Below are positions 37,925 to 58,436 of a stretch of DNA of 64,000 nucleotides, piece after piece. Below the pieces are notes generated by a model, which saw nothing but the letters and a program-made list of their open reading frames with translations, was not told the origin of the DNA and did no database searches. A program made the position numbers and the translations under genes. Each line of letters begins with the position of its first letter. Positions within the stretch are counted from its first letter, which is position 1. This stretch comes from Guillardia theta CCMP2712 (taxonomy: Eukaryota > Protista > Cryptophyta): contig NW_005434569.1 in the NCBI RefSeq assembly GCF_000315625.1, positions 89,349 through 153,348 of the forward strand, read 5' to 3'.

Positions 37925-38507
37925 GGCATAGCTGAGATGCAGTTCCAATGGTGGAATCTGAATGACATCAAGTTAGCAACCTCAGGCCTCCCGCCTCCAT
38001 ATCACCCTCATCCTCATCCTCTTGATACAACAACGCCGACGACAACAATTTTACCTTAACGTCGAGCTTGAAATCTTCGATAACATCTCTGATCTTATCT
38101 CTGTACTGACCCGTATGTATACCCATAGTTGTGCTTCCACACAGCATCCATGCTCTTGATGTACATGCGCAAGCTGCTCAGACAGTCAGACAAGCGCACT
38201 TCCAAGGTACACCAAGAGCGTACCCGTAGATCTCTTTCGTTGCCGTGACTATGTCGTTATACTGGAACCATTGGAACTGTGTCATGCGGCACAGCAGGGT
38301 AAGCAGTACTACCCCAGCAGCCCACACGTCCACTGCTGTGGTCTGGCACTGCATGCCCATGAGCACTTCGGGCGCTCGGTATTCCCGAGTTCCCGCGCGG
38401 TTGACTGGACGTTCGAATTTGACCCCTGAGTTCCTCACTGTCACCGATGCGTTCGTCTTGCTGACGCCCAACATGATCCGCCTCTTCGCCGCCATCTGCT
38501 GCGCCAT
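37925..38507 (-). pseudogene. Cdc7-like Ser/Thr kinase C-lobe fragment
   Basis: NRAGTREYRAPEVLM..QTTAVDVWAAGVVLLTLL matches Cdc7 subdomains VIII-IX (RAGTxGFRAPEVL). No N-lobe, HRD or DFG upstream; the 3' exons run into the LTR. Confidence 0.65.
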
Positions 38508-39067
38508 CTCTAGCTTCTACTGCTCCTTTTGATTCCGCGAGGAGCGAGAGCTGGCCGTAGAAACCTCACGAGAGCTGGCCGTAGAAACCAGACTGTATGC
38601 TAGAATATGAAACTCAAGCATCATTGCAACGCCGCTTCCGACATCACACGGACGGTACGGCCCGGTACCGCCGGGCATTGCCGCCGCGTGCCGCTCTGGC
38701 TCGGAACTTGAACCGTTGACTCACCGGCGCCGCCCGGCCGTAAGCCTGGGACGGCCCGGTCCGGTCACCAGTGTTGCATTACGTCATGATCTTGGATTTT
38801 CGGCATTTTCTTCCGGCAGTGGGTTGTCTTCAATCGAGAACAAAAGTAGGGTGGGGTAGTTGTATAAGTATTCTACGTTTGCTGCTCTGGTACAAATTAC
38901 ATGTTTTTAACAATTTCAAATCGATTTCAAAGCCTCTGAAATCTTCAAATCCCTAGCCCGAGCCATCCACACGCCGCGCATGTCGCCACTTCAGGCTTGC
39001 ACGCCGGCACGTCTCCCCATGACCTTGGCACGCAGTACACTGAAAGAGGACCCAGCGTGACGCCATA

Positions 39068-40183
39068 ATGGCAGCTGTCCGCATTCGTTTGCAACGAGCA
39101 GCTGCTCAGGCAGGACTGAATGTTCGACGATCGAATGAGATAGAGTTCTCGCGGTTGGAAAGATCAAAGCCTGACCTTATAACCCATGGAGTTCCTGAAT
39201 GTATCAAACAGCCCCTGGCAGTGGAGCGAAGACTCGAGGTGTCAAGTGGTATACAATGGACAGATGAACGTATTCAAATATCCTTGAATATTGGTCCAGG
39301 GATTGGAATCGTGTACCCAGATGCTGGAAATGGCTCGAGAAGACTTGGAATAGTCAAGCGTGTTGACATTCAAACATCAATGTTTGAAGTTTATATGCTA
39401 TATGATCGGAGCCTGCTTAAGAGCGTTGATTCAAATTTGATATCTGAGCATATGCCCAACCACCAAGTATCTCATTTCACCCGACAGCTCAAAGACAATC
39501 AGTGCCTGCAATCCGTATATTGTGAAACTGTTAAGATCGATGAGGTCCAGGATGTGTTCCAGGTGAAGTACCCAGTATATCAGCTTCCAGATCATGAAAA
39601 TGATGAGAAGGTGGTATATGTCATTGGTTACATACATTTTTGTTCAGAATACATCGGAAAGCAAAAGTACTGTGAATGCGCCATTTTTTCAATTTCAAGT
39701 CCTCGTGATTTTATTGAGAAAATGATGCGAATGTCAAGTGCTACTGAGAGGTATTTTGTCATACACCAGGATCTTGCTGCTTTCAAAAATCAGTTGTTCA
39801 AATGGTTGGTGGCAAGGGGATCATCGCGAGAGAAGAAGAGGACAAAGCAGTTAGAGTTCTCTTGCGTCGATGTTTCTATAAGCAGTACTACCGCATCTTG
39901 TCACTTGTTCCGGAGGCTTTACGACCACTTCTGAAGGTAAAACGTCAGCAGACAAGCTACAAGTGGTACATTTGCTGTGGAGATTCCTACAAGAGCCTGT
40001 CCGAAACCTTTGCCAAATCTGAGTCGAGTATATGTAATCTTACCGATGATGCTTGTTTGCAAGAGAAATTCACTGGTCGTTTCTTTTCATTCAATGCAAG
40101 GTCTTGACGGTTTTGGAGACGTCGAGTGGACGGCTCCCTCGAGATCAGAAAAACAGAAAAACCGGCGAGGTTCTAAGGTTTGA
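39068..40183 (+). CDS. Transposon-borne protein with a putative BAH-like domain; apparent frameshift near 39870, 3' end uncertain
   Basis: 288-aa ORF; LGIVKRV..FEVYMLYDRSLL..QCLQSVYCETVKIDEVQDVFQVK..VYVIGY follows the BAH strand pattern. Coding-like continuation FYKQYYRILSLVP... in the -1 frame. Confidence 0.5.
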
Positions 40184-40259
40184 TAGCAGTCCATGCTCAG
40201 CCGCGCGGTGGATATGTTGAGACTTAATCTGCTTATGCCATATTTATTAGATTTTGGTC

Positions 40260-43219
40260 TTACACTTGTACATCCTCTAAATCATTTACAAAATCGCACA
40301 AGGCAAATGAGATTGTTAGAGATTCCACCAAGATGTCTATGCCTCTGCCTCTGCTATAATCGTTGTCATATACAACTTCTTCAGGCTCGTACGGAATTCC
40401 GTCGGCAGCGCACTGTGCCTGCTTCTCACGCTGTTCTTTTCTCGTTCGAGTCATATCTTGAATTATACTTTTTCTCCACAGCAACCTCCCTAGTTGCTGG
40501 CAAACAAAAGTTCAGCCAAAAGTCTATGACAGATGAAATAATGCAATTACCTTGTGTCTCGCCTCCACAGTTTCCATACTTGACAGAGATAGGGTGGTCC
40601 CAAATTCTTCAATGTGCACTTTGAAGAGTTTTGCAAGGTGACCTTGAGCGATGAAATGAAAATAAACTGCAGAGAACATATCTTTGTCTCCTGTCAAAAC
40701 TGGATATCGAATAGCAAAAGAGTTCAGTCTTTTGGGTAAACTGTCGATCTCCTCCTTGCTCAGTTCATGAAAATGCTTTTTCGAAAGCGTTTTGTCTATC
40801 GAACACCAATTTCGAAAAATATCCTTGCAATACACCTGCTTGTCTGGATCCGTCGGGTACAATACCTCCATCACCCCAGGCAATACGTTTTCTTGAAACT
40901 TGATGCACCGTACCCCATCCAAGTTGGGCATTACATACTCGTCGGTCTTGTATTTGTACTTGATGTTGTGGTTGTCGAAAACCTTCAAGACTGCGTCCAC
41001 CTTCGTGGGCCCGTTCTTCTTGGCCACTTTGAAAATCCATCTCAAAAACATCTGGTCAATTCTCATTCTGTTATGAAGCAGGCAGGCAACAAGCATTCGC
41101 AGCACGTCGTCGCCGAAGAACTCAAGCATGTCGGAGTCCCGCGCTTCTGCGTCATTCTGTCTCAAAACCATGACTCGCTGACCTTGTTCAAGTCTTCCAG
41201 AGTCTTTCGTAGTTTCCATCTGATGCACGTCTTCAGAAGTTATTTTTCCATCATTTTCTATTTCTCCATCATTTCCTGTTACATGCGTACAGCTTTGAAT
41301 AAATTCTCTCTGTGATGCAGACATGCTTGGATCATTTAGGACCCCGAAGTCTCCCGCATCGATATCTCTTGATTCACAAAAATCTGCAAGAGATGTTCTT
41401 TCGGCGATTGGCTCAATTTTGAAAATACGATGCCTTTCCTTCGTGCTTTCTTTGCAGTATATACAACAGTGTGCATCTCGTATTCCTGCCAAGGTCAAAC
41501 TTAGTGAGAGGACAAAACAATGGATGGTCGTACCTTTGATGTTGAAGAGGCCCCAGAGTCCTTTGAGATCAGCCTTCACGTGAAACGTAATGGTGATAAC
41601 CTTCTCAGGATAACTCTCTGCCTCGGTAGTGGTCTTCTCACGTCCACCTAGACAGCTCAGATTCCCATGCTTGTCGGTGTAGAAATGCAGGCCACCTTGT
41701 ATGGTTTTTCCATCTTGAGTCTTGTAATTCTTTCTGATTTCCTGAATGCTTTGTTTATATGGGTGAACAATGTTTTTCTGAATTTTATCTGCAGAGTCTT
41801 CGCCGCTCACGACAGCAAACGTTACTAAACATTCTTGATTCTTATTTCGTTTTTCCTGTTTGAACCGATACTCGCGTATGATGGGAGTGTCTTCGTTCCA
41901 GCGTGCACTTAAGCACAAAGTAACTTCTGTATGAGACGAGTCACTCTGCGCAGATTTTCCCGTCCTGCACCCGTCATATGAAATCCAAGCATCAAGGCTA
42001 TCTGCAGTTGCTATTTCGGGACATTCGGCAATAACTTGCATGTACTTCATTTCCAGGGCGAGTGCAATAGGAACCCCCTTTCCGTCAGGCAAGTCGATGA
42101 TAGGAAGCTTCTGTCTAATCAACGACTTCATACTTCTTGCCTTCTTGGAGACCGAATCATAGGATGGGAAAAATCCAGACCGTTTACATCCACTCAACTT
42201 TGCTTCCGAAGCATTATCTGCATCTTTCTCAAGGCAAGTAGTCGCTTTTCGCATTATCTTGCAAGTCTGTCGTAGCTGTTTGTCAGTCATCTGCATTTTG
42301 AGGCAATCGATAGCCACAGAGTCAACTGTTGGACTTATTGAAGATGCGATCTCGTTCACTGCCCTAAGCACCGAGTGGTCCTTGCGTGCATTGTCAGTCA
42401 AGAAGGGCTTGGTTCCTTGTGCAAATCCTGACAAAAAGGTGGGAAAGAAGAACATGGATGGTTTGCTTGCTATTGTACACATTTCCCCAAAAAGTCTGGC
42501 GACGCATGAATCTTTAGCCCCACTAATTTGTTTCAAACATCGCTCAAAAACATCGGAAACAGGTGTGAACTGCTTCCACATCTTCGTAAGGCAGCTTCGT
42601 TTGGCATCGACCCATTCGGGCTCATCTGGAATCGAGTCAAAAGAATGAAATGCATGTCCTTCTTGCTCCGGGCATACACTATGCCAGATAGTGTCGAAAT
42701 CAACAGTTGGGTCGAAAACTTGGTTTTTCTGCATCAGATCCTTTAAATCGAAATAATCCAGTAGCGCTTTCCCGATGACAGACTGTTCTGATAGTAAGAA
42801 ACCTTCACCACAAGCATCGACGAAGCCTTTCACATCGGGCAACCCATCTTTATCGTAGAATTTTTCCACAGATGCCAAAACTGCTAGACCATTGTATGAG
42901 CCATGCTTGATTCGTATGCGGAGGTCTTTGGCTAGTTTGGGAACATTTTTTTCAAACGCGAACAGCCAGCGAACAGATGTTTTCAGGGCATTGATGATGA
43001 TCTCAAAGGATGAAGTACGAACAGGTGTAGTTGCAAAAATCGACCGATCAACTCGTCCATATCTTCACGGTCCAAAGGACGGGCGGCGCCGCGGGCGGTC
43101 CAAGGACATGGAGGAGCTGCATGGTTCCCCCTGCCAGAGACAAACTCGGCCCGCTTCAGAGCTCTTGGTGCCGACGAGCAAGCTTGGGGGGGGTCTTGAG
43201 ATGCACTCATTGCAAGCAT
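40260..43219 (-). CDS. RAG1-core/Transib/Chapaev-like DDE transposase; introns 41486-41533 and 40497-40550, apparent frameshift at 43035-43039
   Basis: Ordered motifs SYDG (D 41973-5), KADLK (D 41568-70), CIYC, CLLHNRMRI, LDG, YFHFIAQGH and SMETVEARHK (E 40563-5) parallel RAG1 D600, D708, CTLC, LHCDIG, MNGN, YFHKTLAH and SEGNESGNK (E962). Confidence 0.8.
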
Positions 43220-43763
43220 TGTTGTAATCAAAGCATCAGACTTGAAAAAGATAGATCATGTTTCGTGAGACAGGTTGGTAATACATGTCTACAAGCAAAT
43301 TGGCGGCAAAATATATACCAGACTGGAGGGCACCCACCCCATGAAATGACCACATCAATTCCTATCACCCCTATCTAGCACTCAAAGTCTCTGTTATAGG
43401 TGTGGGTGGGCATTTGAAATTCGGTGTCAGGGGTAGGTGGGATCCCAAGTTGCTCCCACCACCCACCCTTTGCTGATTCGAACTTTGTGTTTCTCCACCT
43501 ACCAATACTCAAGGAGCAGTCCGTTAGTCAAATAGGGGGGTACAAAAGGGAGACACGGGGACTACCCCTGTACTCATCACGAATGTGTCTGGTCTGGTCT
43601 GAACACGTTCACAGACCACAATTCTGTTTCTCGCCAGGGAGTAACTACCCTACCCTGCAACATCCTTTATTTTCCACCGGTCCAACTAGACTTCATGAAC
43701 CCTACCTGTTCTGTGACTATCATGATGGGGTCCCATGATGCGTGAGAGAGTCATGTCCACCCG

Positions 43764-44997: not shown

Positions 44998-45632
44998 TGT
45001 CAGAGCTCATAGGAACCGAGCCCGAGTCAGACAAAGGCCTATCAGGATGAAAGGACAGGTGGCTGTCTCGTACTCGTGTTCGAAGCTGACTTCTCCTGGA
45101 TGACCCAGGATACTCTACTCCAGTGTGAAGCTGCTGAAAGGACCCCTGTGGAGGCCTTTGTTGCAGCAACCGTGTACCCGTGGGGGACTTACAAGGTAAA
45201 CAGAAGGGGTGCGTCTTGTGCAGTACGACCCGTTGGAAACAGCTTGCTGCCATGCAAGGACGGGGTTCTCTTCCCTGCGAGAGAGCATGGTATCCTCTCG
45301 AAGGTCAGAAGGGATGCTTGTCAACTTCCAAGAACAGGACACCCCTCCTTTCTGTAGCCAAGAGACGGCACCCCTGGCTCATTCCTCGAAGCTATAAAAG
45401 GATGAAACTCGTCAGAGCTAGGTGGTCCTCTTCCCCTTTCGTGTGTGTGCCACGATTGTTGAGACGTCTTTGTGTGTATCGTCTTGTCTTGTTTTGTGTG
45501 TGTGTGTGAAAGAAATAAAAGAGAGTTAGATCTCCTTCTGTTTCACCGCTTTCCCTCTTAGTAGAGAAATCCAACGTGAGTTCTTATTGAACTGCGCTTG
45601 AAGGTCCACTCGAGAATCTTCGAGGTGTGACA
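44998..45632 (+). repeat. Gypsy 5' LTR
   Basis: Direct repeat of 50897-51531; contains TATAAAA and AATAAA. Confidence 0.97.
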
Positions 45633-45737
45633 TAAAATTGGTAGCAAGGTTGTGATCGGTGATAGAGATCGATTCTTCTCTCTTCCCCTCCCTTTCTCCA
45701 CTGTTCTTCTGCTTCTTCCTACGCTTACGTCGCGTAG

Positions 45738-48700
45738 ATGTCCGGATACAATACTCGACTCGCAGCTCGCATGCTGGACGAGAATGCTACGGATACTTTG
45801 GAACATGACTGGCAATCTGCTGCCGGCATTGACGACGATCTTCGTCCCGAATCGACCGAGGATCGGTCGCTCCAAAACATGTCTGCCGCGCTGCTGGAGG
45901 TTCAGCAGCGGTTGAACGCTCTCGAAGCTCCTGCTTCTTCTGAGGCGGTCCCGCCCGCCGCTCTCAAGCCTGGACCGCCCCCCATCTCCTCGCGTGACGG
46001 TCCTCAGCTGGTCTCTCTGGCTGATCAGCAATTGCTTGCTAAGTTGCGCAATCTCCCCAAGTTGGATACTGCCCGCCAAACTAGCGCCAACAATGTCTTG
46101 ACATGGGTTCAAACCATTCAGTACTCCTTTGCTGTGTATGGTATCCCCCGAGCCAACTGGGTTGTCCATACCCTCGATTTACTGGATGCTCCAGTGCGCC
46201 AACACTTCGTGGCCAAGTACCCGCCAGAGACCTTTCGCCGCATGGAGTGGGATACATTTTCAGAGGAAATTCGTGAAAAATTCCTGCCTCCTCACCTGCT
46301 GTCGAATCTCATTCACCAACTCGACAATTTGAATCAAGACCGTCAGGAATCTCTTGCTTCGTATGCTGCCCGAACCCTGACCTTAATCGAGCAACTTCAG
46401 CTCCTTCCGGATGGTAAATTATTTGCGACGTCCTCACTGGTCTGCAAACGGTTCATTAATGGTGTCCGATCGCATATGACTGCTCTACTCTTGAATCAGT
46501 GGGTGACTCTACAGCGTTCGGATGATGTTGACTTCCGTCAGCTCAGGGAGTACGCGCTCAAGATCGACAATCAGACCAGAACCAAAGAACATTCGACGGG
46601 AGCAGATCCCCACCGGCAGCTCTACTCCGTGCAGGTGGGCAATCGCTCCTCTAATTCTAATGATCGCAAGAGTCGTCCTTCTGGCAAGGCTTCGGCCTTC
46701 AAAGAGCGCCGTGCTGCTCGGCAGGACGCCAGGAGTGCGGGAGACTCCTCGTCCCCAAACACATCGACCAATGCCATCCGTTGTTACAACTGTGGCAAAC
46801 TCGGACATCGATCTTCCGAGTGTCGTCGTACCCGCCGCAGTCAGAGTCCTGAACGTGAGCAGTCGTCCGACTCCTCCTCTCCGCCTCTGCTTGGCGCTGT
46901 TCAGACTTCCGACGACCGCAAGGCTGCTCCGTCCGTTGCAGCTAACAAGATTGCTGCTCGCTCGAAGACGCCTAAGCGCCGTCCTCAGGTGCATTTCTCT
47001 GAAGAACTGGAAGATGAAGTGCCTCTGGACGGTGACGCTCTCGAGGTACACTTGCATCCGATTGCACTCCATTCCCTTGGCTCTCAGGAGCACGGGGCGT
47101 CTTCAGGATCGCTTCTCTATCTGCCCATTGTACCACTCACCTCTCCGGTGCCAGCTACTACTTCCGAGATCCTGGCTTTGCTTGACTCGGGTGCTGAGAT
47201 CAGTGTGATCTCGCGTCAGGTTGCGCGACAGCTCCAACTGACCACACAGCGTATTCCCGCCACGCTTACCGCTCAGTTCGCTCATGGCGACGCCAAGGTC
47301 GTGCTTCGTGAAACCTGTCTCCTGCCGTTTCGCATTGCAGGCACCAATGTTGAAACGCAAGAAACGTTCTTCATTTTGGACTCTCCAGCATCACTGCCGG
47401 CGATCTTGTCCCAACCGTTCATTGCCAAGATGAAAATGAATATCGACTTTCATTCCAAGCTCGTTACTATTCCAGCGCAGGATGGTACTGCGGGGCGTCA
47501 ACGCCTTCCGCTCGCATTTCACATCCCTGGTCCTGGCTCCGCGGCTATGCGGCAAGCCCAGTGTTTGATCTTTCCCTGGCATGCGGACTGGAACACGCTT
47601 CAGCCTCCTCCACCTGAGGATATGATGCCCTGGGTCATGGCGACCGTGTCCTCGCCTGTTTCTACCAGTTCGTTGGTCTCTCAGGTCGCCTCGTCGGCCT
47701 CGCCGCTCGCAGCTCAGGCCTTGCAGGAGCTACTCGAGGACTTTTCCGATGTTCTGGTGGACGAACTACCAATCCAGTCACCTGTCTCGCGGGGGCAGTA
47801 TGACGTTGTCCTTCGGGTTCCTGATGACGTTCGTCCAATTCGTCGTCGTCCCTACCGACTTCCTGCGACGCTCCAGGAGGAGCTCGCTAAAACGATCGAC
47901 TTCTTGTTGGCACGCGGCATCATCGAGCGGAACAATGATGTCATGTGGCAGAGTCCCGTCATCTTTGTTCGCAAAGGTCTTTCCTCTGAAGGAGTCCCTC
48001 AATTTCGTTTTTGTATTGATTATCGAGGAGTCAACAATCACCTCCTCGACGACAGTTTTCCGCCTCCCGTCCCTACCGAGCTCATGGAACGGATCGGGCG
48101 AGTGCTCTCGCAGCGTACTGAGTCCAGTACGGATACCCTCTACTTCAGCAAGCTGGATATGGCCTCAGGATTCTGGCAGCTAGCTCTCACTCCTGACAGC
48201 TCTCAATATACTGGGTTTGTTACTGAACAAGGCTCCTACCAATTCCGCGCTCTGCCCTTTGGTCTGAAAACGGCCACAGCTGCCTTCCAGAAGTTCTCAC
48301 AGGGCATCCTCGCAGGTATGGCCAACGTCTTAGTCTACGTCGATGATCTCTTACTATTTTCCATGGGTAATCCTCGTTCACACCTACAGCAGGTGCGTCT
48401 CCTACTGGAGCGCCTCCGCCACCACCAGGTCTTCGTTAAACGGAGCAAGTGTGTGTTTCTTCAGACGCAGATCAGTTTTCTCGGATATACTTTGAATGCG
48501 CATGGGATTGCACCCGAGGCTAGCAAAGTTGCTGCCATCGAAGATTTTCCGCCTCCTGCATCTGTGAAACAACTTCGCCAATTTTTAGGCCTCGCCAATT
48601 TTTATCGGCGTTTCATCAAGAATTTTGCCAACTATGCTGCACCTCTCTCAGATCTGCTGAAAACCAGTCAACGTCGCTTCGTGTGGACTCGGTCTGCTGA

Positions 48701-50786
48701 GACTGCTTTTGCCGCGCTCAAGACAGCTCTTACGCAGGCTCCAGTCTTGGCTCACTTCCGTTCTGATCGGCTGACCATCCTGTACACAGACGCTAGCGAC
48801 CTGGCCATTGGAGCCGCGCTTCATCAGATCGATGAAAACAACGAGGAACATCCCGTTGCATTCTATGGCAAGAAACTCTCCTCCGCCGAACGCAATTACT
48901 CCACCTATGAGCGTGAGCTTCTTGCTCTCAAGGAAAGTCTCCGTCATTTTTCCTACTACTTGATTGGTCGTCGCTTTCGTGTATGTACCGATCACCACAG
49001 CTTGATCAGATTGAACACCCAGTCTGAACTCTCTCCCCGCCTGGCTCGTTGGTTGTCTACCTTCCTTCAGTACGACATGGAGATCCACCACATCCCTGGC
49101 GAAACTAACGTCGTTGCTGATGCCCTCAGTCGGATCTCAGGCGACTCGCCTGCTCCATCGTTCGCTCCCCAATCACCCGCTGATCTGACTCAGGCTCATG
49201 ATCGCGCTATGCGCGCTGAAGACATTGCTCGGGATCTTCTTGTTGGTCTTCATACCGTTCAGATGCTTACGGATTCCTCGTTCGTCTCCCAACTGATGCA
49301 GAACTACTCCACCTGTCCTGATTTTCAGGTTTTATACCAATTGGGCAAAGACGGTGAATTGCTCGGCCAACCGGGTTGTCGTCATTTTGAATTTTCGGAT
49401 GACTTGCTCTACTATGTTGACTCTACCGGCAGGACGAGGATCTGTGTTCCTACCGCTATCCGCGCTGCTGTACTACGCCTAGCGCATGATGATGCCGGAC
49501 ATGTGGGTTCTGACAAAACCTACCTCTCACTTGTTGCCAAAGTCTACTGGAATAACATGAAGCGTGACGTCGAAAATTACGTGCATTCCTGCCTCATTTG
49601 CCAGGCTGCGAAGAACTACAAACAGAAACCCATCGGTTTGCCCAAGAGTCATGACGTTCCTGCTGACAAATTTGACGTCATCTCCGTCGATCTCCTCAGC
49701 GGACTTCCGACTACCTCCCAAGGTCATGATTCTCTCTTCGTCATGTTGGACTCGTTCTCGCAACATGTCACGCTGGCTCCAACTCACAAGTCTGCTACGA
49801 CCCAGGAACTTGTGGATTTATTTCTCCAATACTTCTATCGCACTCGTGGTCTTCCTGCTGCAATCCTTTCGGATAATGGGCCAAATGTCTCCTCGCATTT
49901 TTGGGATACAGTATTTCAGACGCTAGGTGTTCAGGTACGCCACTCTTCCAAGTACTATCCCCAGGCCAATGGTCGCGTTGAACGGATCAATGCCACCATT
50001 CTGGATATGCTCCGCACTAAACTCGCTCAGGGTTCATCTGAATGGACAGTCCATCTTCCATTCATTGAGTTTGCCCTCAATCATGCCCCCCGTCGTGAAA
50101 CAGGGTTATCTGCCTTTCAAGTGGAATACGGCAAGAATCCGCGCTCAGTTATGGATTTGACCCTTGATCAGGTTCTTCCTCAAGCCCGCACGACTGTCGA
50201 CAACATACGTGCAGGTGAAAACCTTGTGCGAGATACCTTGGCCTCGATCGCCAATCGAGCAGAGACGCGTCTACTTCCTTCTCGCCGCCCGCTTCGTTGG
50301 CAAGTTGGTGATTTGGTCTGGATCGACGCGCGTTTATTCAATCAGCAGTTTGAAATTCGCAAATTTCGAGATCGATACATTGGTCCTTTCCCTATCACCG
50401 AGGTTTGCAACAACAACAATTATCGAGTTGATGTTCGCCAGCGCTTCCCTCGCATGGATCAAGATGTTTTTAATGCCAAGTTCCTACGCCCCCATGTGCG
50501 CAGGAAAGATCATTTGCAGCAGCCTGTGGTTTCCCAACCTGTGCCTGGATTCTACGAAGTGGCTCGCATCCTCAATCATCGTCAACGTAATGGTGCGAAG
50601 CAATATCTGGTTCGTTGGAAGGGATTTTCCTCCGCCGACGACACTTGGGAACCTGTTGCCCATCTCTCGCGTACACCGGCGCTCCGTCAGTTGCTTCAGC
50701 AATATGAACAGCATCGCACGCGTCAAGATGCTTCTGCTTCTTCTCATGGACAGCGGCAGCGGCAGCGTCGTGCGCCTCTCAATTAG
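45738..50786 (+). CDS. Gypsy Gag-Pol polyprotein with C-terminal chromodomain, 1682 aa
   Basis: CYNCGKLGHRSSEC; LLDSGA; RFCIDYR, LPFGL, YVDD; YTDASD; integrase H-H-C-C, SVDL, SDNG, NGRVER; GPF; chromodomain YEVARILNHR...YLVRWKGFSSADDTWEP. Confidence 0.97.
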   Translation: MSGYNTRLAARMLDENATDTLEHDWQSAAGIDDDLRPESTEDRSLQNMSAALLEVQQRLNALEAPASSEAVPPAALKPGPPPISSRDGPQLVSLADQQLLAKLRNLPKLDTARQTSANNVLTWVQTIQYSFAVYGIPRANWVVHTLDLLDAPVRQHFVAKYPPETFRRMEWDTFSEEIREKFLPPHLLSNLIHQLDNLNQDRQESLASYAARTLTLIEQLQLLPDGKLFATSSLVCKRFINGVRSHMTALLLNQWVTLQRSDDVDFRQLREYALKIDNQTRTKEHSTGADPHRQLYSVQVGNRSSNSNDRKSRPSGKASAFKERRAARQDARSAGDSSSPNTSTNAIRCYNCGKLGHRSSECRRTRRSQSPEREQSSDSSSPPLLGAVQTSDDRKAAPSVAANKIAARSKTPKRRPQVHFSEELEDEVPLDGDALEVHLHPIALHSLGSQEHGASSGSLLYLPIVPLTSPVPATTSEILALLDSGAEISVISRQVARQLQLTTQRIPATLTAQFAHGDAKVVLRETCLLPFRIAGTNVETQETFFILDSPASLPAILSQPFIAKMKMNIDFHSKLVTIPAQDGTAGRQRLPLAFHIPGPGSAAMRQAQCLIFPWHADWNTLQPPPPEDMMPWVMATVSSPVSTSSLVSQVASSASPLAAQALQELLEDFSDVLVDELPIQSPVSRGQYDVVLRVPDDVRPIRRRPYRLPATLQEELAKTIDFLLARGIIERNNDVMWQSPVIFVRKGLSSEGVPQFRFCIDYRGVNNHLLDDSFPPPVPTELMERIGRVLSQRTESSTDTLYFSKLDMASGFWQLALTPDSSQYTGFVTEQGSYQFRALPFGLKTATAAFQKFSQGILAGMANVLVYVDDLLLFSMGNPRSHLQQVRLLLERLRHHQVFVKRSKCVFLQTQISFLGYTLNAHGIAPEASKVAAIEDFPPPASVKQLRQFLGLANFYRRFIKNFANYAAPLSDLLKTSQRRFVWTRSAETAFAALKTALTQAPVLAHFRSDRLTILYTDASDLAIGAALHQIDENNEEHPVAFYGKKLSSAERNYSTYERELLALKESLRHFSYYLIGRRFRVCTDHHSLIRLNTQSELSPRLARWLSTFLQYDMEIHHIPGETNVVADALSRISGDSPAPSFAPQSPADLTQAHDRAMRAEDIARDLLVGLHTVQMLTDSSFVSQLMQNYSTCPDFQVLYQLGKDGELLGQPGCRHFEFSDDLLYYVDSTGRTRICVPTAIRAAVLRLAHDDAGHVGSDKTYLSLVAKVYWNNMKRDVENYVHSCLICQAAKNYKQKPIGLPKSHDVPADKFDVISVDLLSGLPTTSQGHDSLFVMLDSFSQHVTLAPTHKSATTQELVDLFLQYFYRTRGLPAAILSDNGPNVSSHFWDTVFQTLGVQVRHSSKYYPQANGRVERINATILDMLRTKLAQGSSEWTVHLPFIEFALNHAPRRETGLSAFQVEYGKNPRSVMDLTLDQVLPQARTTVDNIRAGENLVRDTLASIANRAETRLLPSRRPLRWQVGDLVWIDARLFNQQFEIRKFRDRYIGPFPITEVCNNNNYRVDVRQRFPRMDQDVFNAKFLRPHVRRKDHLQQPVVSQPVPGFYEVARILNHRQRNGAKQYLVRWKGFSSADDTWEPVAHLSRTPALRQLLQQYEQHRTRQDASASSHGQRQRQRRAPLN

Positions 50787-56322: not shown

Positions 56323-58436
56323 CATTCTGGGGTCAAACCGCGTTGGTTTTCGCCCTATATCTTCAAGGGGGTGGTGCATGGGAAAATGGGGGTACACGGC
56401 ATGTGATTTGCGCAGGTTGAAATTCTGTACTGTTGAAATTCAAACCATATTCAAAACCGTGATTAAAAGTGATTTTGGAAGTTTAGCTTATCGTTTCTTG
56501 GTACCTTCTAAAATGTTTTAATTCTACACGCCTCCACCCACTACCCCAGCGCGTCTCCCCTCACCATTCTGCTCTCATGTCGCGAAGCTCTTCTCTGCCG
56601 ATCCTTGTCTTCAGTAGTGTTTGAGTTTTGTGCGAGCATGTTTGCCCAAGTTGCAGTCACTTGCAGCAGGTGAGCCTCATCAATATTTCTCTTCGTCCAA
56701 CCCGCTGTGCCGGTTGGTGAAAATGTTACAATGCCATAATCTGTTTTCAAAGTTTGGTTTGTTGAACGCATCCATTGTTGGGGACGAGTATACCACGAAC
56801 ACACACGAGCATGAAGAGACTCGAAAGTATTTTGGGAGAGGAAAAGGTGCAAATGAACTCATTACATCACACAGGTAGAGAGTTCTTCTGTGGATTGTTC
56901 ATTTTTTAATCGTTGTGAACAAGTAGCAAAAGCATGGCGATGTTGAAAACTAGGTTCTGAATGGTTGCAGCTGAAACGCATTACAAGATTCCAAGACCTT
57001 TATTCCACGAAGACCTTCATCTTCATGTACTGGATGGAATATCATATTTATGAGAGATGCTTCACTGTGCCACATGACTTATTCACATCATGTTTGAACT
57101 TCTCCGCCTTTGAATGATGCATCTCTTGTTGCATGACTTAAAAACCACTTTGTGAAGATGCATAGTCTTGTATATATCCATGTCCACATGCTCAAAGCCT
57201 TGCCACTTTGTGACAAACAATATTGAAAAATCTTGAAGACAGCAAACCCAACGGCACGGTGTTGGATGGCAGTGCACCTACAGCATGTGCTTCAATTCTG
57301 TTGTGCGCGCACCATATGCTATTGTGGCTGTCATTATCATTGACTGGAAGTCAGTGTCAATTTGCTGGTAGTTCGACATCCTGAGACAAATGCTTCGAAT
57401 GAATAATAAATGTCAAATCAGATATCACCTCCAACCTTGATTCTACATTCTGATTGCAACGCACAATGGATTCTTGCATGCAAGCTGACAAGCTCGAGAC
57501 TTGATCCCTGATATGATCTGAGGCTTAATTGGACGTCAACAGCTCCGCCATTAGGGAAGCAAAGCAAAGTTCATGCATTTCACCAAATGTGCAAACATGC
57601 AAAGGACTTGAGTGAGGAGAGTTTGGAGAGAGGAGGGGAGATACTTCAACAAGAGCTTCGTGAGAGTCAAGTAATTGGCATATTTCAAAGATTCAAATAT
57701 CATCAAACTTTTTCTGAACGTGTGAAGCAACGATGTAACGAAGCGTACAGAAGACATGCCGAGGAGGGAGTCAAGTGAGATGTGATTGCGCCTTAATTAA
57801 ATGAACTCGTCATGATCTTACAGATATTATTATTCAGTTCACTTTTCAGATAAAGTACATTACTCTGAGGGCCCAGAAGTCTTGAAGAGAACATTGATGA
57901 TACGATTGACTTAGTCGTCGGACATGTAGGATGACGAACTCATGCAGACTGATCCACTCCTGCAAGATCACCAAGTAAGAATTTATGCTGGATTCTTGAT
58001 GCCAAGTGTACCTTGCGATCATCTTCTTACTCGGCAGTCTTTCACCTGTGCTCATGGTGGCAGCTCGCTGACCTTGCTGCTGTGCTCGCCCGGCGGCTCA
58101 GCATGACGGTGTGCGATTTGACGATGGGAATGATGGGGAGTGTTTCCCCACCCTCATCGACAGGGTGGGTCATCAAAATTGTTTTAGATGGTACAAAACA
58201 GCAGTTATAAACCGTTACTTAGTACAACTGCTTGTACTACGGATTCGAATAAACAATTCATTACCGTTAAAACAAATGGACACGCCAGTTCAAAATTTGA
58301 AGCACCCCTACCACTGATATTACCGAGCACCACCCCTCAAAAACGATGGGGTACACCACCACCGGTATCCTATGAGAACAGCATACGCATTCCTCTTTTG
58401 CGTTAATAAAGACCAACGCGGTTTGACCCCAGAATG
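56323..58436. mobile_element. Non-autonomous TIR transposon, 2114 bp, 25-bp perfect TIRs, 3-bp TSD
   Basis: CATTCTGGGGTCAAACCGCGTTGGT (56323-56347) and its exact reverse complement (58412-58436); TTC on both flanks (56320-22, 58437-39); decayed ORF remnants inside. Confidence 0.9.

What the first reader, a model, noticed from the sequence alone, without database searches (positions are those of the whole stretch)
38777..43740. ProtoRAG-like transposon: RAG1-type transposase tail-to-tail with a BAH-like chromatin-reader gene
Seen: ~290 bp inside the left TIR a + gene (39068-~40183) converges on an intron-containing - gene (43219-~40260), with 3' ends nearly touching. The - protein carries, in order, SYDG / KADLK / CIYC / LLH / LDG / YFHFIAQGH / SMETVEARHK. 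Established: this D-D-CxxC-LH-HxxxxH-E layout is that of the RAG1 core and Transib/Chapaev transposases, and ProtoRAG/RAG loci pair RAG1 convergently with RAG2, whose PHD finger reads H3K4me3 in vertebrates. Inference: the partner here shows no kelch or PHD pattern but does show a BAH-like beta pattern, so this could be an independently evolved two-gene transposase + chromatin-reader system in an alga. Caveats: the BAH call is by eye, and each gene shows one apparent frameshift, so this copy may be inactive.
Basis: partly seen in the sequence, partly recalled or inferred. Interest (0 to 1): 0.9.

Follow-up and report, generated by a model that had tools for sequence, protein, structure and literature searches.

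The report
Algal RAG1-fold transposon with BAH partner
This is a partly decayed copy of a two-gene jumping element of the alga Guillardia theta: its cutting enzyme is predicted to fold like RAG1, the antibody-gene recombinase, and it always travels with a second gene predicted to fold like a chromatin-binding BAH domain, so it parallels RAG1-RAG2 but is not a RAG transposon.

Summary
The 784-aa minus-strand ORF has no Pfam or PDB sequence match. Its AlphaFold model matches only RAG1, HzTransib and BbRAGL among solved structures (VIA Z 17.5, 17.0 and 16.1; next, P element, 11.4). The D, D, CxxC, LH, HxxxxxH and E residues are invariant across paralogs. The plus-strand partner (residues 56-222) matches only BAH domains (Z 9-11).

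In the Guillardia theta genome, 21 of 28 transposase matches have a partner match within 1.5 kb, always convergent. The same layout occurs on metagenome contigs. Both genes show purifying selection.

It is not ProtoRAG-like in lineage:
- Termini are CATT..AATG.
- One subfamily, including an intact 5.3-kb copy, makes 3-bp duplications; another makes none. Neither makes 5 bp.
- There is no RAG2-like partner.
- Predicted CACTA-type transposases match the model as well as RAG1 does.

It fits the broad CACTA/Mirage/Chapaev/Transib clade as a new cryptophyte lineage.

In this copy the transposase "frameshift" is a 54-nt intron. The partner has two real frameshifts. The right end is only weakly defined. 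The chromatin-reader function is inferred, not shown. The scan had already noted this family many times on other DNA of this genome.

The parts
38777..38791 (+). Left terminus of the element (CATTACGTCATGATC)
   Evidence: A fragment on contig C107 begins to match here, also with CATTAC, and the upstream flanks differ. The family's clear TIRs also start with CATT.
38847..38862 (+). Left subterminal G-rich motif GTAGGGTGGGGTAGTT
   Evidence: An inverted copy lies at 43643-43658, about 70 nt in from a right end placed at about 43728. Similar G-rich motifs lie near the ends of other subfamilies.
39068..39934 (+). Partner gene, first reading-frame segment (288 aa); residues 56-222 are a BAH-fold domain
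   Evidence: ORF. AF2 model at pLDDT 75.7. Every listed Foldseek hit is a BAH-containing protein, E 3e-7. VIA Z 11.3 to EBS, 11.2 to SHL, 11.0 to the DNMT1 BAH. 48 paralogous matches in the genome.
39889..40183 (+). Partner gene, C-terminal part, broken by two frameshifts (about 39889 and about 39965) and ending at the stop at 40183
   Evidence: Three-frame translation against the intact paralog on C320 (45% identical) shows the frame going 2, then 1, then 2 without a gap.
40260..40496 (-). Transposase, last exon (78 aa plus stop)
   Evidence: It follows the GT..AG intron 40550-40497. It restores the conserved GRxxWRK tail and matches the public model GUITHDRAFT_145556.
40551..41485 (-). Transposase exon holding CxxC (C472, C475), CLLH, LDG, YFHFIAQGH and the catalytic E772
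   Evidence: Invariant residues in the paralog alignment. The model range 182-784 aligns to mouse RAG1 461-974.
41486..41533 (-). In-frame 48-nt intron just upstream of CxxC
   Evidence: Canonical GT..AG. Paralogs and a transcript-derived protein lack these 16 residues, and they have pLDDT below 50 in the model.
41534..42878 (-). Transposase exon with the helical N-terminal region and the RNase H-like core holding D302 and D437
   Evidence: ORF. D302 and D437 are invariant. Fold match to RAG1, Transib and RAGL.
42879..43231 (-).
   Evidence: Sequence and ORFs. Public model P0031. No read data could be obtained.
43643..43658 (-). Right subterminal motif GCAGGGTAGGGTAGTT
   Evidence: Inverted match to 38847-38862.
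43721..43740 (-). Candidate right terminus (..CATGATG ending at 43727, or ..CATGATG ending at 43740); not resolved
   Evidence: Only 7-9 nt are complementary to the left end. No TSD is visible. An upper bound is the gypsy LTR that starts at 44998.

Best explanation
Window 38777 to about 43740 is a single, partly decayed copy of a two-gene cut-and-paste DNA transposon family. The family was found only in cryptophytes: Guillardia theta, Hanusia phi and a few metagenome contigs.

Gene 1, on the minus strand, is a DDE transposase. Its predicted core (DNA-binding domains, RNase H fold, ZnC2/ZnH2 module) has the RAG1/Transib architecture. D302, D437 and E772 are the predicted metal-binding triad. 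C472, C475, H741 and H747 are the predicted zinc site.

Gene 2, on the plus strand and convergent, encodes a protein of about 400 aa in intact copies. It has a basic N-terminal helix, a very divergent BAH-fold domain and a conserved C-terminal region.

Shown here:
- both predicted folds;
- the invariant residues;
- the conserved tail-to-tail linkage;
- purifying selection on both genes;
- CATT..AATG inverted termini;
- a 3-bp target duplication in one subfamily and none in another.

Inferred:
- The transposase binds the termini, excises the element and reinserts it as a CMCT-clade enzyme.
- The BAH protein is an obligatory accessory subunit that links or regulates the transposase on nucleosomal DNA, a functional analogue of RAG2 but not a homologue.

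In this copy the transposase frame is open once its introns are removed. The partner has two frameshifts, so the copy is probably not autonomous.
For: Transposase fold:
- AF2 model at pLDDT 76.8.
- The top 49 Foldseek PDB hits are all RAG1, HzTransib or BbRAGL; the next hit, Hermes, has E 0.24.
- VIA Z 17.5 to RAG1 over 414 aligned residues at 4.2 A. Z 17.0 to HzTransib and 16.1 to BbRAGL, against 11.4 for the P element and 6 for Hermes.
- Language-model features are nearest to RAG1 clusters, score 0.96.
- The spacing from D437 to CxxC is 19 and 22 residues after removing the intron. From my memory of the mouse sequence, D708 to C727 and C730 in RAG1 is the same.
- The catalytic and zinc residues are invariant.

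Partner fold:
- Every listed Foldseek and VIA hit is a BAH-containing protein.
- The nearest Atlas clusters carry PF01426, though weakly, at 0.81.

Linkage and selection:
- 21 of 28 transposase matches have a partner match within 1.5 kb, all convergent, across copies only 21-35% identical.
- Metagenome contigs show the same layout; the partner matches the profile at hhalign probability 100%.
- dN/dS between the C285 and C154 copies is 0.35 for the transposase and 0.19 for the partner.

Mobility:
- An intact 5,331-bp element at C154:116038-121368 has 20-bp TIRs and an AAC duplication.
- Counting that intact copy, the window's own 2.1-kb copy and nine other 2.1-kb copies, 9 of 11 copies of this subfamily have a perfect 3-bp TSD.
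- A 5,028-bp element on C307 has perfect 25-bp TIRs.

Expression:
- A full-length spliced paralog (881 aa) is in a G. theta transcriptome.
- Transposase and partner relatives are in the Hanusia phi transcriptome.
Against: - No sequence-level link to any known family. Pfam, PDB sequence searches and profile searches are all silent.
- Both folds are predictions from shallow alignments of 28 and 14 sequences.
- No residue-level structural alignment was available. The equivalence of D302, D437 and E772 with RAG1 D600, D708 and E962 rests on motif order, spacing and aligned ranges.
- The histidine pair is H-x5-H, not the H(3-4)H quoted for the clade.
- The BAH domain's ligand is unknown, and no aromatic cage could be checked.
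- This copy's right end and TSD are not established.
- One subfamily shows no TSD in 13 of 14 copies, nor in one insertion compared with its empty satellite site. This is unexplained.
Confidence: 0.72

Rival explanations
1. It is a true member of the Transib/RAGL lineage, a ProtoRAG-like transposon whose RAG2-like gene was replaced by a BAH gene. On this reading it would use nick-hairpin cleavage at RSS-like ends.
For: - RAG1, HzTransib and BbRAGL are the best solved-structure matches.
- Language-model features are nearest to RAG1 clusters, and no CACTA cluster appears among the rows shown for the top 30.
- The gene pair is convergent, as in RAGL.
- The D-to-CxxC spacing equals that of RAG1.
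- A RAGL element is already known in a protist, Aureococcus (PMC9435367).
Against: - The TSD is 3 bp or absent, not 5 bp.
- Termini are CATT, not CACxxTG.
- There is no kelch or PHD partner.
- The Pfam RAG1 models are silent.
- Predicted CACTA-type transposases (PF02992) match the model as well as RAG1 does.
- No CACTA, Mirage or Chapaev structure is in the PDB, so the PDB ranking cannot separate the lineages.
Confidence: 0.15
2. The partner is not a chromatin reader. Its BAH-like barrel is only a scaffold, and the protein works like TnpA of En/Spm: it binds subterminal element DNA or the transposase, to assemble or repress the transpososome.
For: - CMCT-clade elements often carry a second gene, such as TnpA in En/Spm (my own knowledge) or TET/JBP in fungal elements (PMC12730594).
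- The partner has a conserved basic N-terminal helix and a conserved C-terminal region outside the BAH fold.
- G-rich subterminal motifs recur near element ends.
- Pfam BAH does not recognise the domain.
- BAH domains also mediate protein-protein contacts, as in Orc1-Sir1, which is among the hits.
Against: The listed structural neighbours are all BAH domains from chromatin-associated proteins, many solved with nucleosomes or methyl-lysine histone peptides. No DNA-binding fold was detected. Neither reading was tested directly.
Confidence: 0.3
3. The pair is a domesticated host gene pair, or a chance neighbourhood in a repeat-rich region, and not a mobile element.
For: - This copy is single at the DNA level and has no demonstrable TSD or strong TIR.
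- The transposase carries spliceosomal introns and has a public gene model.
Against: - About 20 linked pairs lie on different contigs.
- Intact copies are bounded by perfect TIRs with TSDs.
- There are non-autonomous derivatives in 14 or more copies each.
- The partner in this copy is frameshifted, which does not fit a host-selected gene.
Confidence: 0.03

Closest known systems
Transib transposons and RAG-like (RAGL/ProtoRAG) transposons; RAG1-RAG2
   Same: - Predicted transposase architecture from the dimerisation/DNA-binding domain through the RNase H, ZnC2 and ZnH2 modules to the catalytic E.
- Order of the D, D, CxxC, H..H and E motifs.
- The second gene is convergent with the transposase, as RAG2L is with RAG1L.
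- The second gene has a fold typical of chromatin readers, as the RAG2 PHD finger is.
   Different: - No detectable sequence similarity.
- TSD of 3 bp or none, instead of 5 bp.
- Termini are CATT.., not CACxxTG with heptamer and nonamer.
- The partner is a BAH fold, not a kelch propeller with or without a PHD.
- The histidine pair is H-x5-H, against H-x4-H in RAG1.
- The genes contain spliceosomal introns.
[quoted passage not shown]
   Same: - 5'-CA..TG-3' termini.
- A 3-bp TSD, as in EnSpm.
[quoted passage not shown]
- Frequent carriage of an accessory gene.
- Predicted structures of PF02992 transposases match the model at TM 0.42-0.53.
   Different: - Pfam Transposase_21, DUF4218 and Transpos_assoc do not match.
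- Termini are CATT(C/A), not CACTA.
- The accessory protein is a BAH fold, not TnpA or TET/JBP.
- One subfamily leaves no TSD.
- Sequence relatives were found only in cryptophytes and a few metagenome contigs.
Chromatin-targeting modules of other mobile elements (chromodomain of chromovirus integrases; Ty5 integrase with Sir4; RAG2 PHD with H3K4me3)
   Same: A mobile element carries, or recruits, a protein module of a fold that reads chromatin. The presumed purpose is to guide or license DNA cleavage or integration.
   Different: Here the module is a BAH fold on a separate protein of a DNA transposon. No binding partner is known, and the comparison is by analogy only (my own knowledge, not tested).

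Membership tests
Transib superfamily | Transposase with the RAG1-core-like DDE fold and zinc module | tested here: met
   Foldseek and VIA against the PDB: Z 17.0 to HzTransib and 17.5 to RAG1. The D, D, CxxC, H..H and E residues are invariant.
Transib superfamily | 5-bp target-site duplication | tested here: not met
   3-bp TSD in 9 of 11 copies of the CATTCTGGGG subfamily, including an intact two-gene copy. No TSD in 13 of 14 copies of the CATTCCATGG subfamily, nor in one insertion compared with its empty satellite site.
Transib superfamily | TIRs beginning with the RSS-like heptamer CAC(A/T)(A/G)TG | tested here: not met
   Termini are CATTCTGGGG.., CATTCCATGG.. and CATTAC...
Transib superfamily | Sequence similarity to Transib/RAG1 core detectable by profile | tested here: not met
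   Pfam hmmscan of 28 members at E up to 10 gave no RAG1 family. PF12940 searched against the genome gave nothing. A profile searched against PDB sequences gave nothing.
RAGL / ProtoRAG transposons | Convergent RAG1-like and RAG2-like (kelch propeller) gene pair | tested here: not met
   The convergent orientation is met in 21 of 21 linked pairs. The partner, however, is a BAH fold with helical regions and no propeller.
CMCT clade (CACTA/EnSpm-Mirage-Chapaev-Transib; PMC12730594) | [quoted passage not shown] | tested here: inconclusive
   CxxC is present and invariant. The histidine pair is invariant but is spaced H-x5-H (YFHxxxxGH).
CMCT clade (CACTA/EnSpm-Mirage-Chapaev-Transib; PMC12730594) | 5'-CA..TG-3' termini and TSD of 2-5 bp | tested here: met
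   CATT..AATG termini and a 3-bp TSD in one subfamily. One subfamily has no TSD, which is an exception.
CMCT clade (CACTA/EnSpm-Mirage-Chapaev-Transib; PMC12730594) | Phylogenetic placement among CMCT transposases | not testable with these tools
   No Repbase or RAG1/Transib/CACTA sequences could be obtained. Only fold-level matches to both RAG1 and PF02992 clusters are available.
EnSpm/CACTA superfamily | Transposase_21 (PF02992)-type transposase and CACTA termini | tested here: not met
   PF02992 does not hit these loci. Termini are CATT, not CACTA. The 3-bp TSD does match.
BAH domain (PF01426) | BAH beta-barrel fold | tested here: met
   Residues 56-222. Every listed hit is a BAH-containing protein. 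Foldseek E 3e-7. VIA Z 11.3 over 123 aligned residues at 3.0 A.
BAH domain (PF01426) | Recognition by the Pfam BAH profile | tested here: not met
   No PF01426 hit at E up to 1. Only weak language-model similarity to BAH clusters, 0.81.
BAH domain (PF01426) | Aromatic cage, or a nucleosome- or histone-binding surface | not testable with these tools
   No model coordinates or residue-level superposition were available. The conserved aromatics Y112, Y151, F191 and F207 are candidates only.

The most novel reading that the evidence does not exclude
A RAG1-fold transposase lineage in cryptophytes independently acquired an obligatory partner that binds chromatin through a BAH domain. That partner licenses or targets cleavage and integration on nucleosomal DNA. 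If so, this would be a second, convergent origin of the 'RAG1 plus chromatin-reading helper' design behind V(D)J recombination.
Probability: 0.3. Interest if true: 0.85.

Novelty: new variant of a known kind. Interest (0 to 1): 0.66.

Why it matters
RAG1-RAG2 is the textbook case of a transposase that works only with a chromatin-reading helper, and how that partnership arose is still debated. Here a transposase of the same predicted architecture, in a distant eukaryotic lineage (Cryptista), is stably paired with an unrelated protein of a chromatin-reader fold. The gene orientation is the same, and both genes are under selection.

If the BAH protein binds nucleosomes and affects transposition, then RAG1-fold enzymes recruited chromatin-binding helpers more than once. 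That would also give a simple, testable system for asking what such helpers do.

More modestly:
- It adds a sequence-orphan lineage to the CACTA/Mirage/Chapaev/Transib clade.
- Within that lineage, sister subfamilies differ in target duplication (3 bp against none).
- About 40 'hypothetical protein' loci in the G. theta genome are parts of one transposon family.
- At least one public gene model, GUITHDRAFT_145556, splices out the zinc-binding CxxC motif.

Tried and rejected
- Sequence searches found nothing informative for either protein: Pfam, PDB sequences with a single sequence and with a profile, and Pfam RAG1 and Transposase_21 against the genome.
- An exhaustive phmmer search of 1.84 billion representatives found only 19 relatives. 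The ten clusters I traced were from G. theta, Hanusia phi or unnamed metagenome contigs. Word-indexed searches added only the window's own gene model and a few partner fragments.
- Complex prediction on an intact pair (C307 transposase 320-892 with partner 40-417) gave no verdict. The score was 0.00, the partner folded poorly and the alignments were not used. This is no evidence either way.
There is therefore no read evidence for transcription, splice sites or the partner frameshifts of this copy, and read laying was not used.
- I could not define this copy's ends from inverted repeats or from the neighbouring repeat.
- The three 10-kb blocks on C389, C307 and C276 are 98-99% identical beyond the element, so they gave no boundaries.
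- I looked for a TSD of any length or offset in the CATTCCATGG subfamily and found none.
Smaller requests were used instead.
- Yuan & Wessler 2011 could not be read.
- The model was built from the 784-aa ORF by reference. That ORF reads through the in-frame 48-nt intron, so model residues 449-464 (inside the low-confidence stretch 449-468) are intron-encoded.

Full report
**What is there**

The window is contig C105:89349-153348 of Guillardia theta CCMP2712. Between a multi-copy repeat that ends at 38711 and a gypsy LTR that starts at 44998 lie two convergent genes.

The plus-strand ORF 39068-39934 (288 aa) continues through two frameshifts to the stop at 40183. Set against the intact paralog on C320 (45% identical), the text runs in frame 2, then frame 1 from about 39889, then frame 2 again from about 39965, with no gap. 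These are therefore indels, not introns.

Splicing joins ..EARHK to QLGRLLWRKS.., which restores a tail conserved in paralogs. The public model GUITHDRAFT_145556 uses the same intron.
- A second intron (41533-41486, 48 nt, in frame) lies just before the CxxC motif, at the position where paralogs also have an intron.
- That public model instead skips the whole CxxC segment, which looks like an annotation error.
- With its introns removed, the transposase frame of this copy is open. The partner is broken.

**Ends of this copy**

The left end at 38777 (CATTAC..) is supported. A fragment on C107 matches from exactly there up to the partner's ATG at 83% identity, and the upstream flanks are unrelated.

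The right end is not established. The inverted-repeat search found nothing between the proposed ends. A sensitive search found only TCATGAT and a 16-nt subterminal motif: GTAGGGTGGGGTAGTT at 38847 and GCAGGGTAGGGTAGTT at 43658-43643. The first lies about 70 nt in from the left end, and the second about 70 nt in from a right end placed at about 43728. I see no target duplication at this copy.

**The transposase**

Sequence methods are blind to it:
- Pfam gave nothing, even at E 10 over 28 family members.
- PDB sequences gave nothing, with one sequence or with a profile.
- PF12940 (RAG1) and PF02992 (CACTA) gave nothing relevant on the genome.

An AlphaFold2 model was built from a 28-sequence family alignment. 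It has mean pLDDT 76.8, with most of the core (240-780) at 80-95 apart from short low-confidence loops.

Foldseek against the PDB returns RAG1, HzTransib and BbRAGL as hits 1-49 (E down to 9e-7). The next family, Hermes, has E 0.24.

VIA-align scores:

| Target | Z | Notes |
|---|---|---|
| RAG1 | 17.5 | 414 residues, 4.2 A; model 182-784 against mouse RAG1 461-974 |
| HzTransib | 17.0 | |
| BbRAGL | 16.1 | |
| P element transposase | 11.4 | |
| Hermes | about 6 | |

The aligned ranges end 12 residues after E772 in the model and 12 after E962 in RAG1. After removing the intron, D437 lies 19 and 22 residues before C472 and C475. From my memory of the mouse sequence, D708 to C727 and C730 has the same spacing.

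D302, D437, C472, C475, C599, H602, R606, H741, H747 and E772 are invariant in all paralogs that cover them. Protein-language-model features are also nearest to RAG1 clusters (0.96).

**Why I do not call it ProtoRAG-like or Transib**

1. Ends and target duplication differ.
   - One subfamily has the TIR CATTCTGGGGTCAAACCGCG.
   - It includes an intact two-gene element at C154:116038-121368 (5,331 bp, TSD AAC).
   - It also includes about 14 non-autonomous copies of 2.1 kb, one of them in this window at 56323-58436 (TSD TTC).
   - Nine of the eleven copies examined have a perfect 3-bp duplication.
   - A second subfamily has a perfect 25-bp TIR, CATTCCATGGCATTTACTAATGCCC. It comprises a 5,028-bp two-gene element at C307:42088-47115 and 2.6-kb derivatives that keep only the partner ORF. 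It shows no duplication in 13 of 14 derivative copies.
   - The C307 element sits in a 332-bp satellite. Its flanks match monomer positions 52-166 and 168-287, so there is no duplication and one base is missing.
   - RAG, RAGL and Transib make 5-bp duplications and start with CAC (PMC10462144, PMC9435367).
2. The PDB holds no CACTA, Mirage or Chapaev transposase. In the ESM Atlas, clusters carrying PF02992, DUF4218 and Transpos_assoc match the model as well as a RAG1 cluster does (TM 0.42-0.53 against 0.42-0.51).
3. Kojima (2025, PMC12730594) groups EnSpm/CACTA, Mirage, Chapaev, Transib, Plavaka, ESTA, Lanisha and RAG1 into a 'CMCT' clade. [quoted passage not shown] That paper also notes that HHpred links such orphan transposases to RAG1.

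The cryptophyte family fits this description, apart from its H-x5-H spacing and the subfamily without a duplication. It is best filed as a new, sequence-orphan lineage of that clade.

**The partner**

An AlphaFold2 model of the 288-aa segment, from a 14-sequence alignment, has pLDDT 75.7, with 85-93 in the beta core.

- Every listed Foldseek hit is a BAH-containing protein: Sir3, Orc1, SHL, EBS, BAHCC1, polybromo, DNMT1 and MTA1, with E down to 3e-7.
- VIA-align gives Z 11.3 to EBS (123 residues, 3.0 A), 11.2 to SHL and 11.0 to the DNMT1 BAH. Residues 56-222 are covered.
- Pfam BAH does not detect the domain.
- The nearest language-model clusters carry PF01426, but only at 0.81.

Intact paralogs are 380-430 aa long. 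They have a basic N-terminal helix and a conserved C-terminal region, which is disrupted here by the frameshifts. What the BAH domain binds is unknown.

**Linkage, selection, expression and range**

- Genome searches gave 28 transposase matches; 21 have a partner match 300-1,500 bp away.
- All 21 linked pairs are convergent, although the copies share only 21-35% protein identity.
- The seven unlinked matches are fragments.
- Contigs from an ENA metagenome project show the same layout, with a 352-433 aa gene 58-76 bp downstream on the opposite strand.
- One of those downstream genes matches the partner profile at hhalign probability 100%, E 3.5e-47. Its transposase is only 44-55% identical to the nearest G. 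theta paralog.
- Between the C285 and C154 copies, dN/dS is 0.35 for the transposase and 0.19 for the partner.
- A full-length spliced paralog (881 aa, with CxxC) is in a G. theta transcriptome.
- Transposase and partner relatives are in the Hanusia phi transcriptome.
- An exhaustive search of 1.84 billion representatives found 19 relatives. The ten clusters I traced came from these sources.

**Mechanism**

Shown:
- This is a mobile, TIR-bounded family with a DDE/zinc-module transposase of RAG1-like predicted architecture.
- A BAH-fold gene is co-inherited with it and is under selection.
- One subfamily integrates with a 3-bp stagger.

Inferred:
- The transposase excises and reinserts the element.
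- The partner is an accessory subunit.

I favour a chromatin-tethering or licensing role for the partner, because all its structural neighbours are BAH domains from chromatin-associated proteins. A TnpA-like role in binding element ends or the transposase is a serious rival. The complex prediction gave no verdict, and reads could not be obtained.

**Verdict**

The kinship claim should be widened from 'ProtoRAG-like' to 'new CMCT-clade lineage with a BAH-fold partner'.

This particular copy is probably non-autonomous and belongs to a subfamily with only one transposase-bearing copy in the genome. I found no description of the pairing in the paper searches I ran. The scan itself has already reported the same family many times on other DNA of this genome.

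Noticed in passing
window 56323-58436: A 2.1-kb non-autonomous element. It has the same TIR (CATTCTGGGGTCAAACCGCG..) as the intact two-gene element at C154:116038-121368 and a TTC target duplication. Only about 72 bp at the end are shared with the autonomous element, and the interior is unrelated. About 14 paired copies are in the genome.
   Followed up: yes
L067 (C285:26313-26900); flanks of C307:42088-47115: A 332-bp satellite that repeats perfectly over the 588 bp read. It is a landing site for members of both subfamilies. The C307 element sits between monomer positions 166 and 168, with no duplication and one base missing.
   Followed up: partly
L046-L060 (for example C191:60999-61595, C12:578964-579725): At least 14 copies, 98-99% identical, of a 2.62-kb derivative that keeps only the BAH-partner ORF, with a changed C-terminus, between CATTCCATGG TIRs. 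Thirteen of the 14 lack any target duplication, and some share one flank but not the other (L054 and L057). This is unexplained.
   Followed up: partly
window 40260-43122 (public model GUITHDRAFT_145556): The public gene model splices from ..FNIK directly to DFCESRD... That removes the invariant CxxC zinc motif and about 34 residues, so it is probably a mis-annotated intron.
   Followed up: partly
window 38000-38711: A multi-copy repeat, 15 or more copies at 95-99% identity. It includes an ORF (38178-38507, minus strand) with Ser/Thr-kinase-like text (..REYRAPEVLMG..DVWAAGVVLL..). It abuts the element's left flank.
   Followed up: no
window 44998-50786 and beyond: A Ty3/gypsy LTR retrotransposon with a 635-bp LTR and a 1,682-aa gag-pol ORF. 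The ORF ends in a chromodomain-like segment (..YLVRWKGFSSADDTWEP..). Many copies at 98-99% identity are in the genome.
   Followed up: no
C389:1-10000, C307:1-11000, C276:29800-40200: Three blocks of at least 10 kb, 98-99% identical, each holding a two-gene copy whose transposase matches contain in-frame stops. A 400-bp direct repeat (88% identical) overlaps the partner's 5' part. These are segmental duplicates or uncollapsed repeats, not independent insertions.
   Followed up: partly
window 38847-38862 and 43643-43658; L033:60-80; window 56370-56395: G-rich motifs (GGGTrGGGTA, GGGGGTGG) recur 25-75 nt inside the ends of several subfamilies. They may be subterminal binding sites.
   Followed up: no
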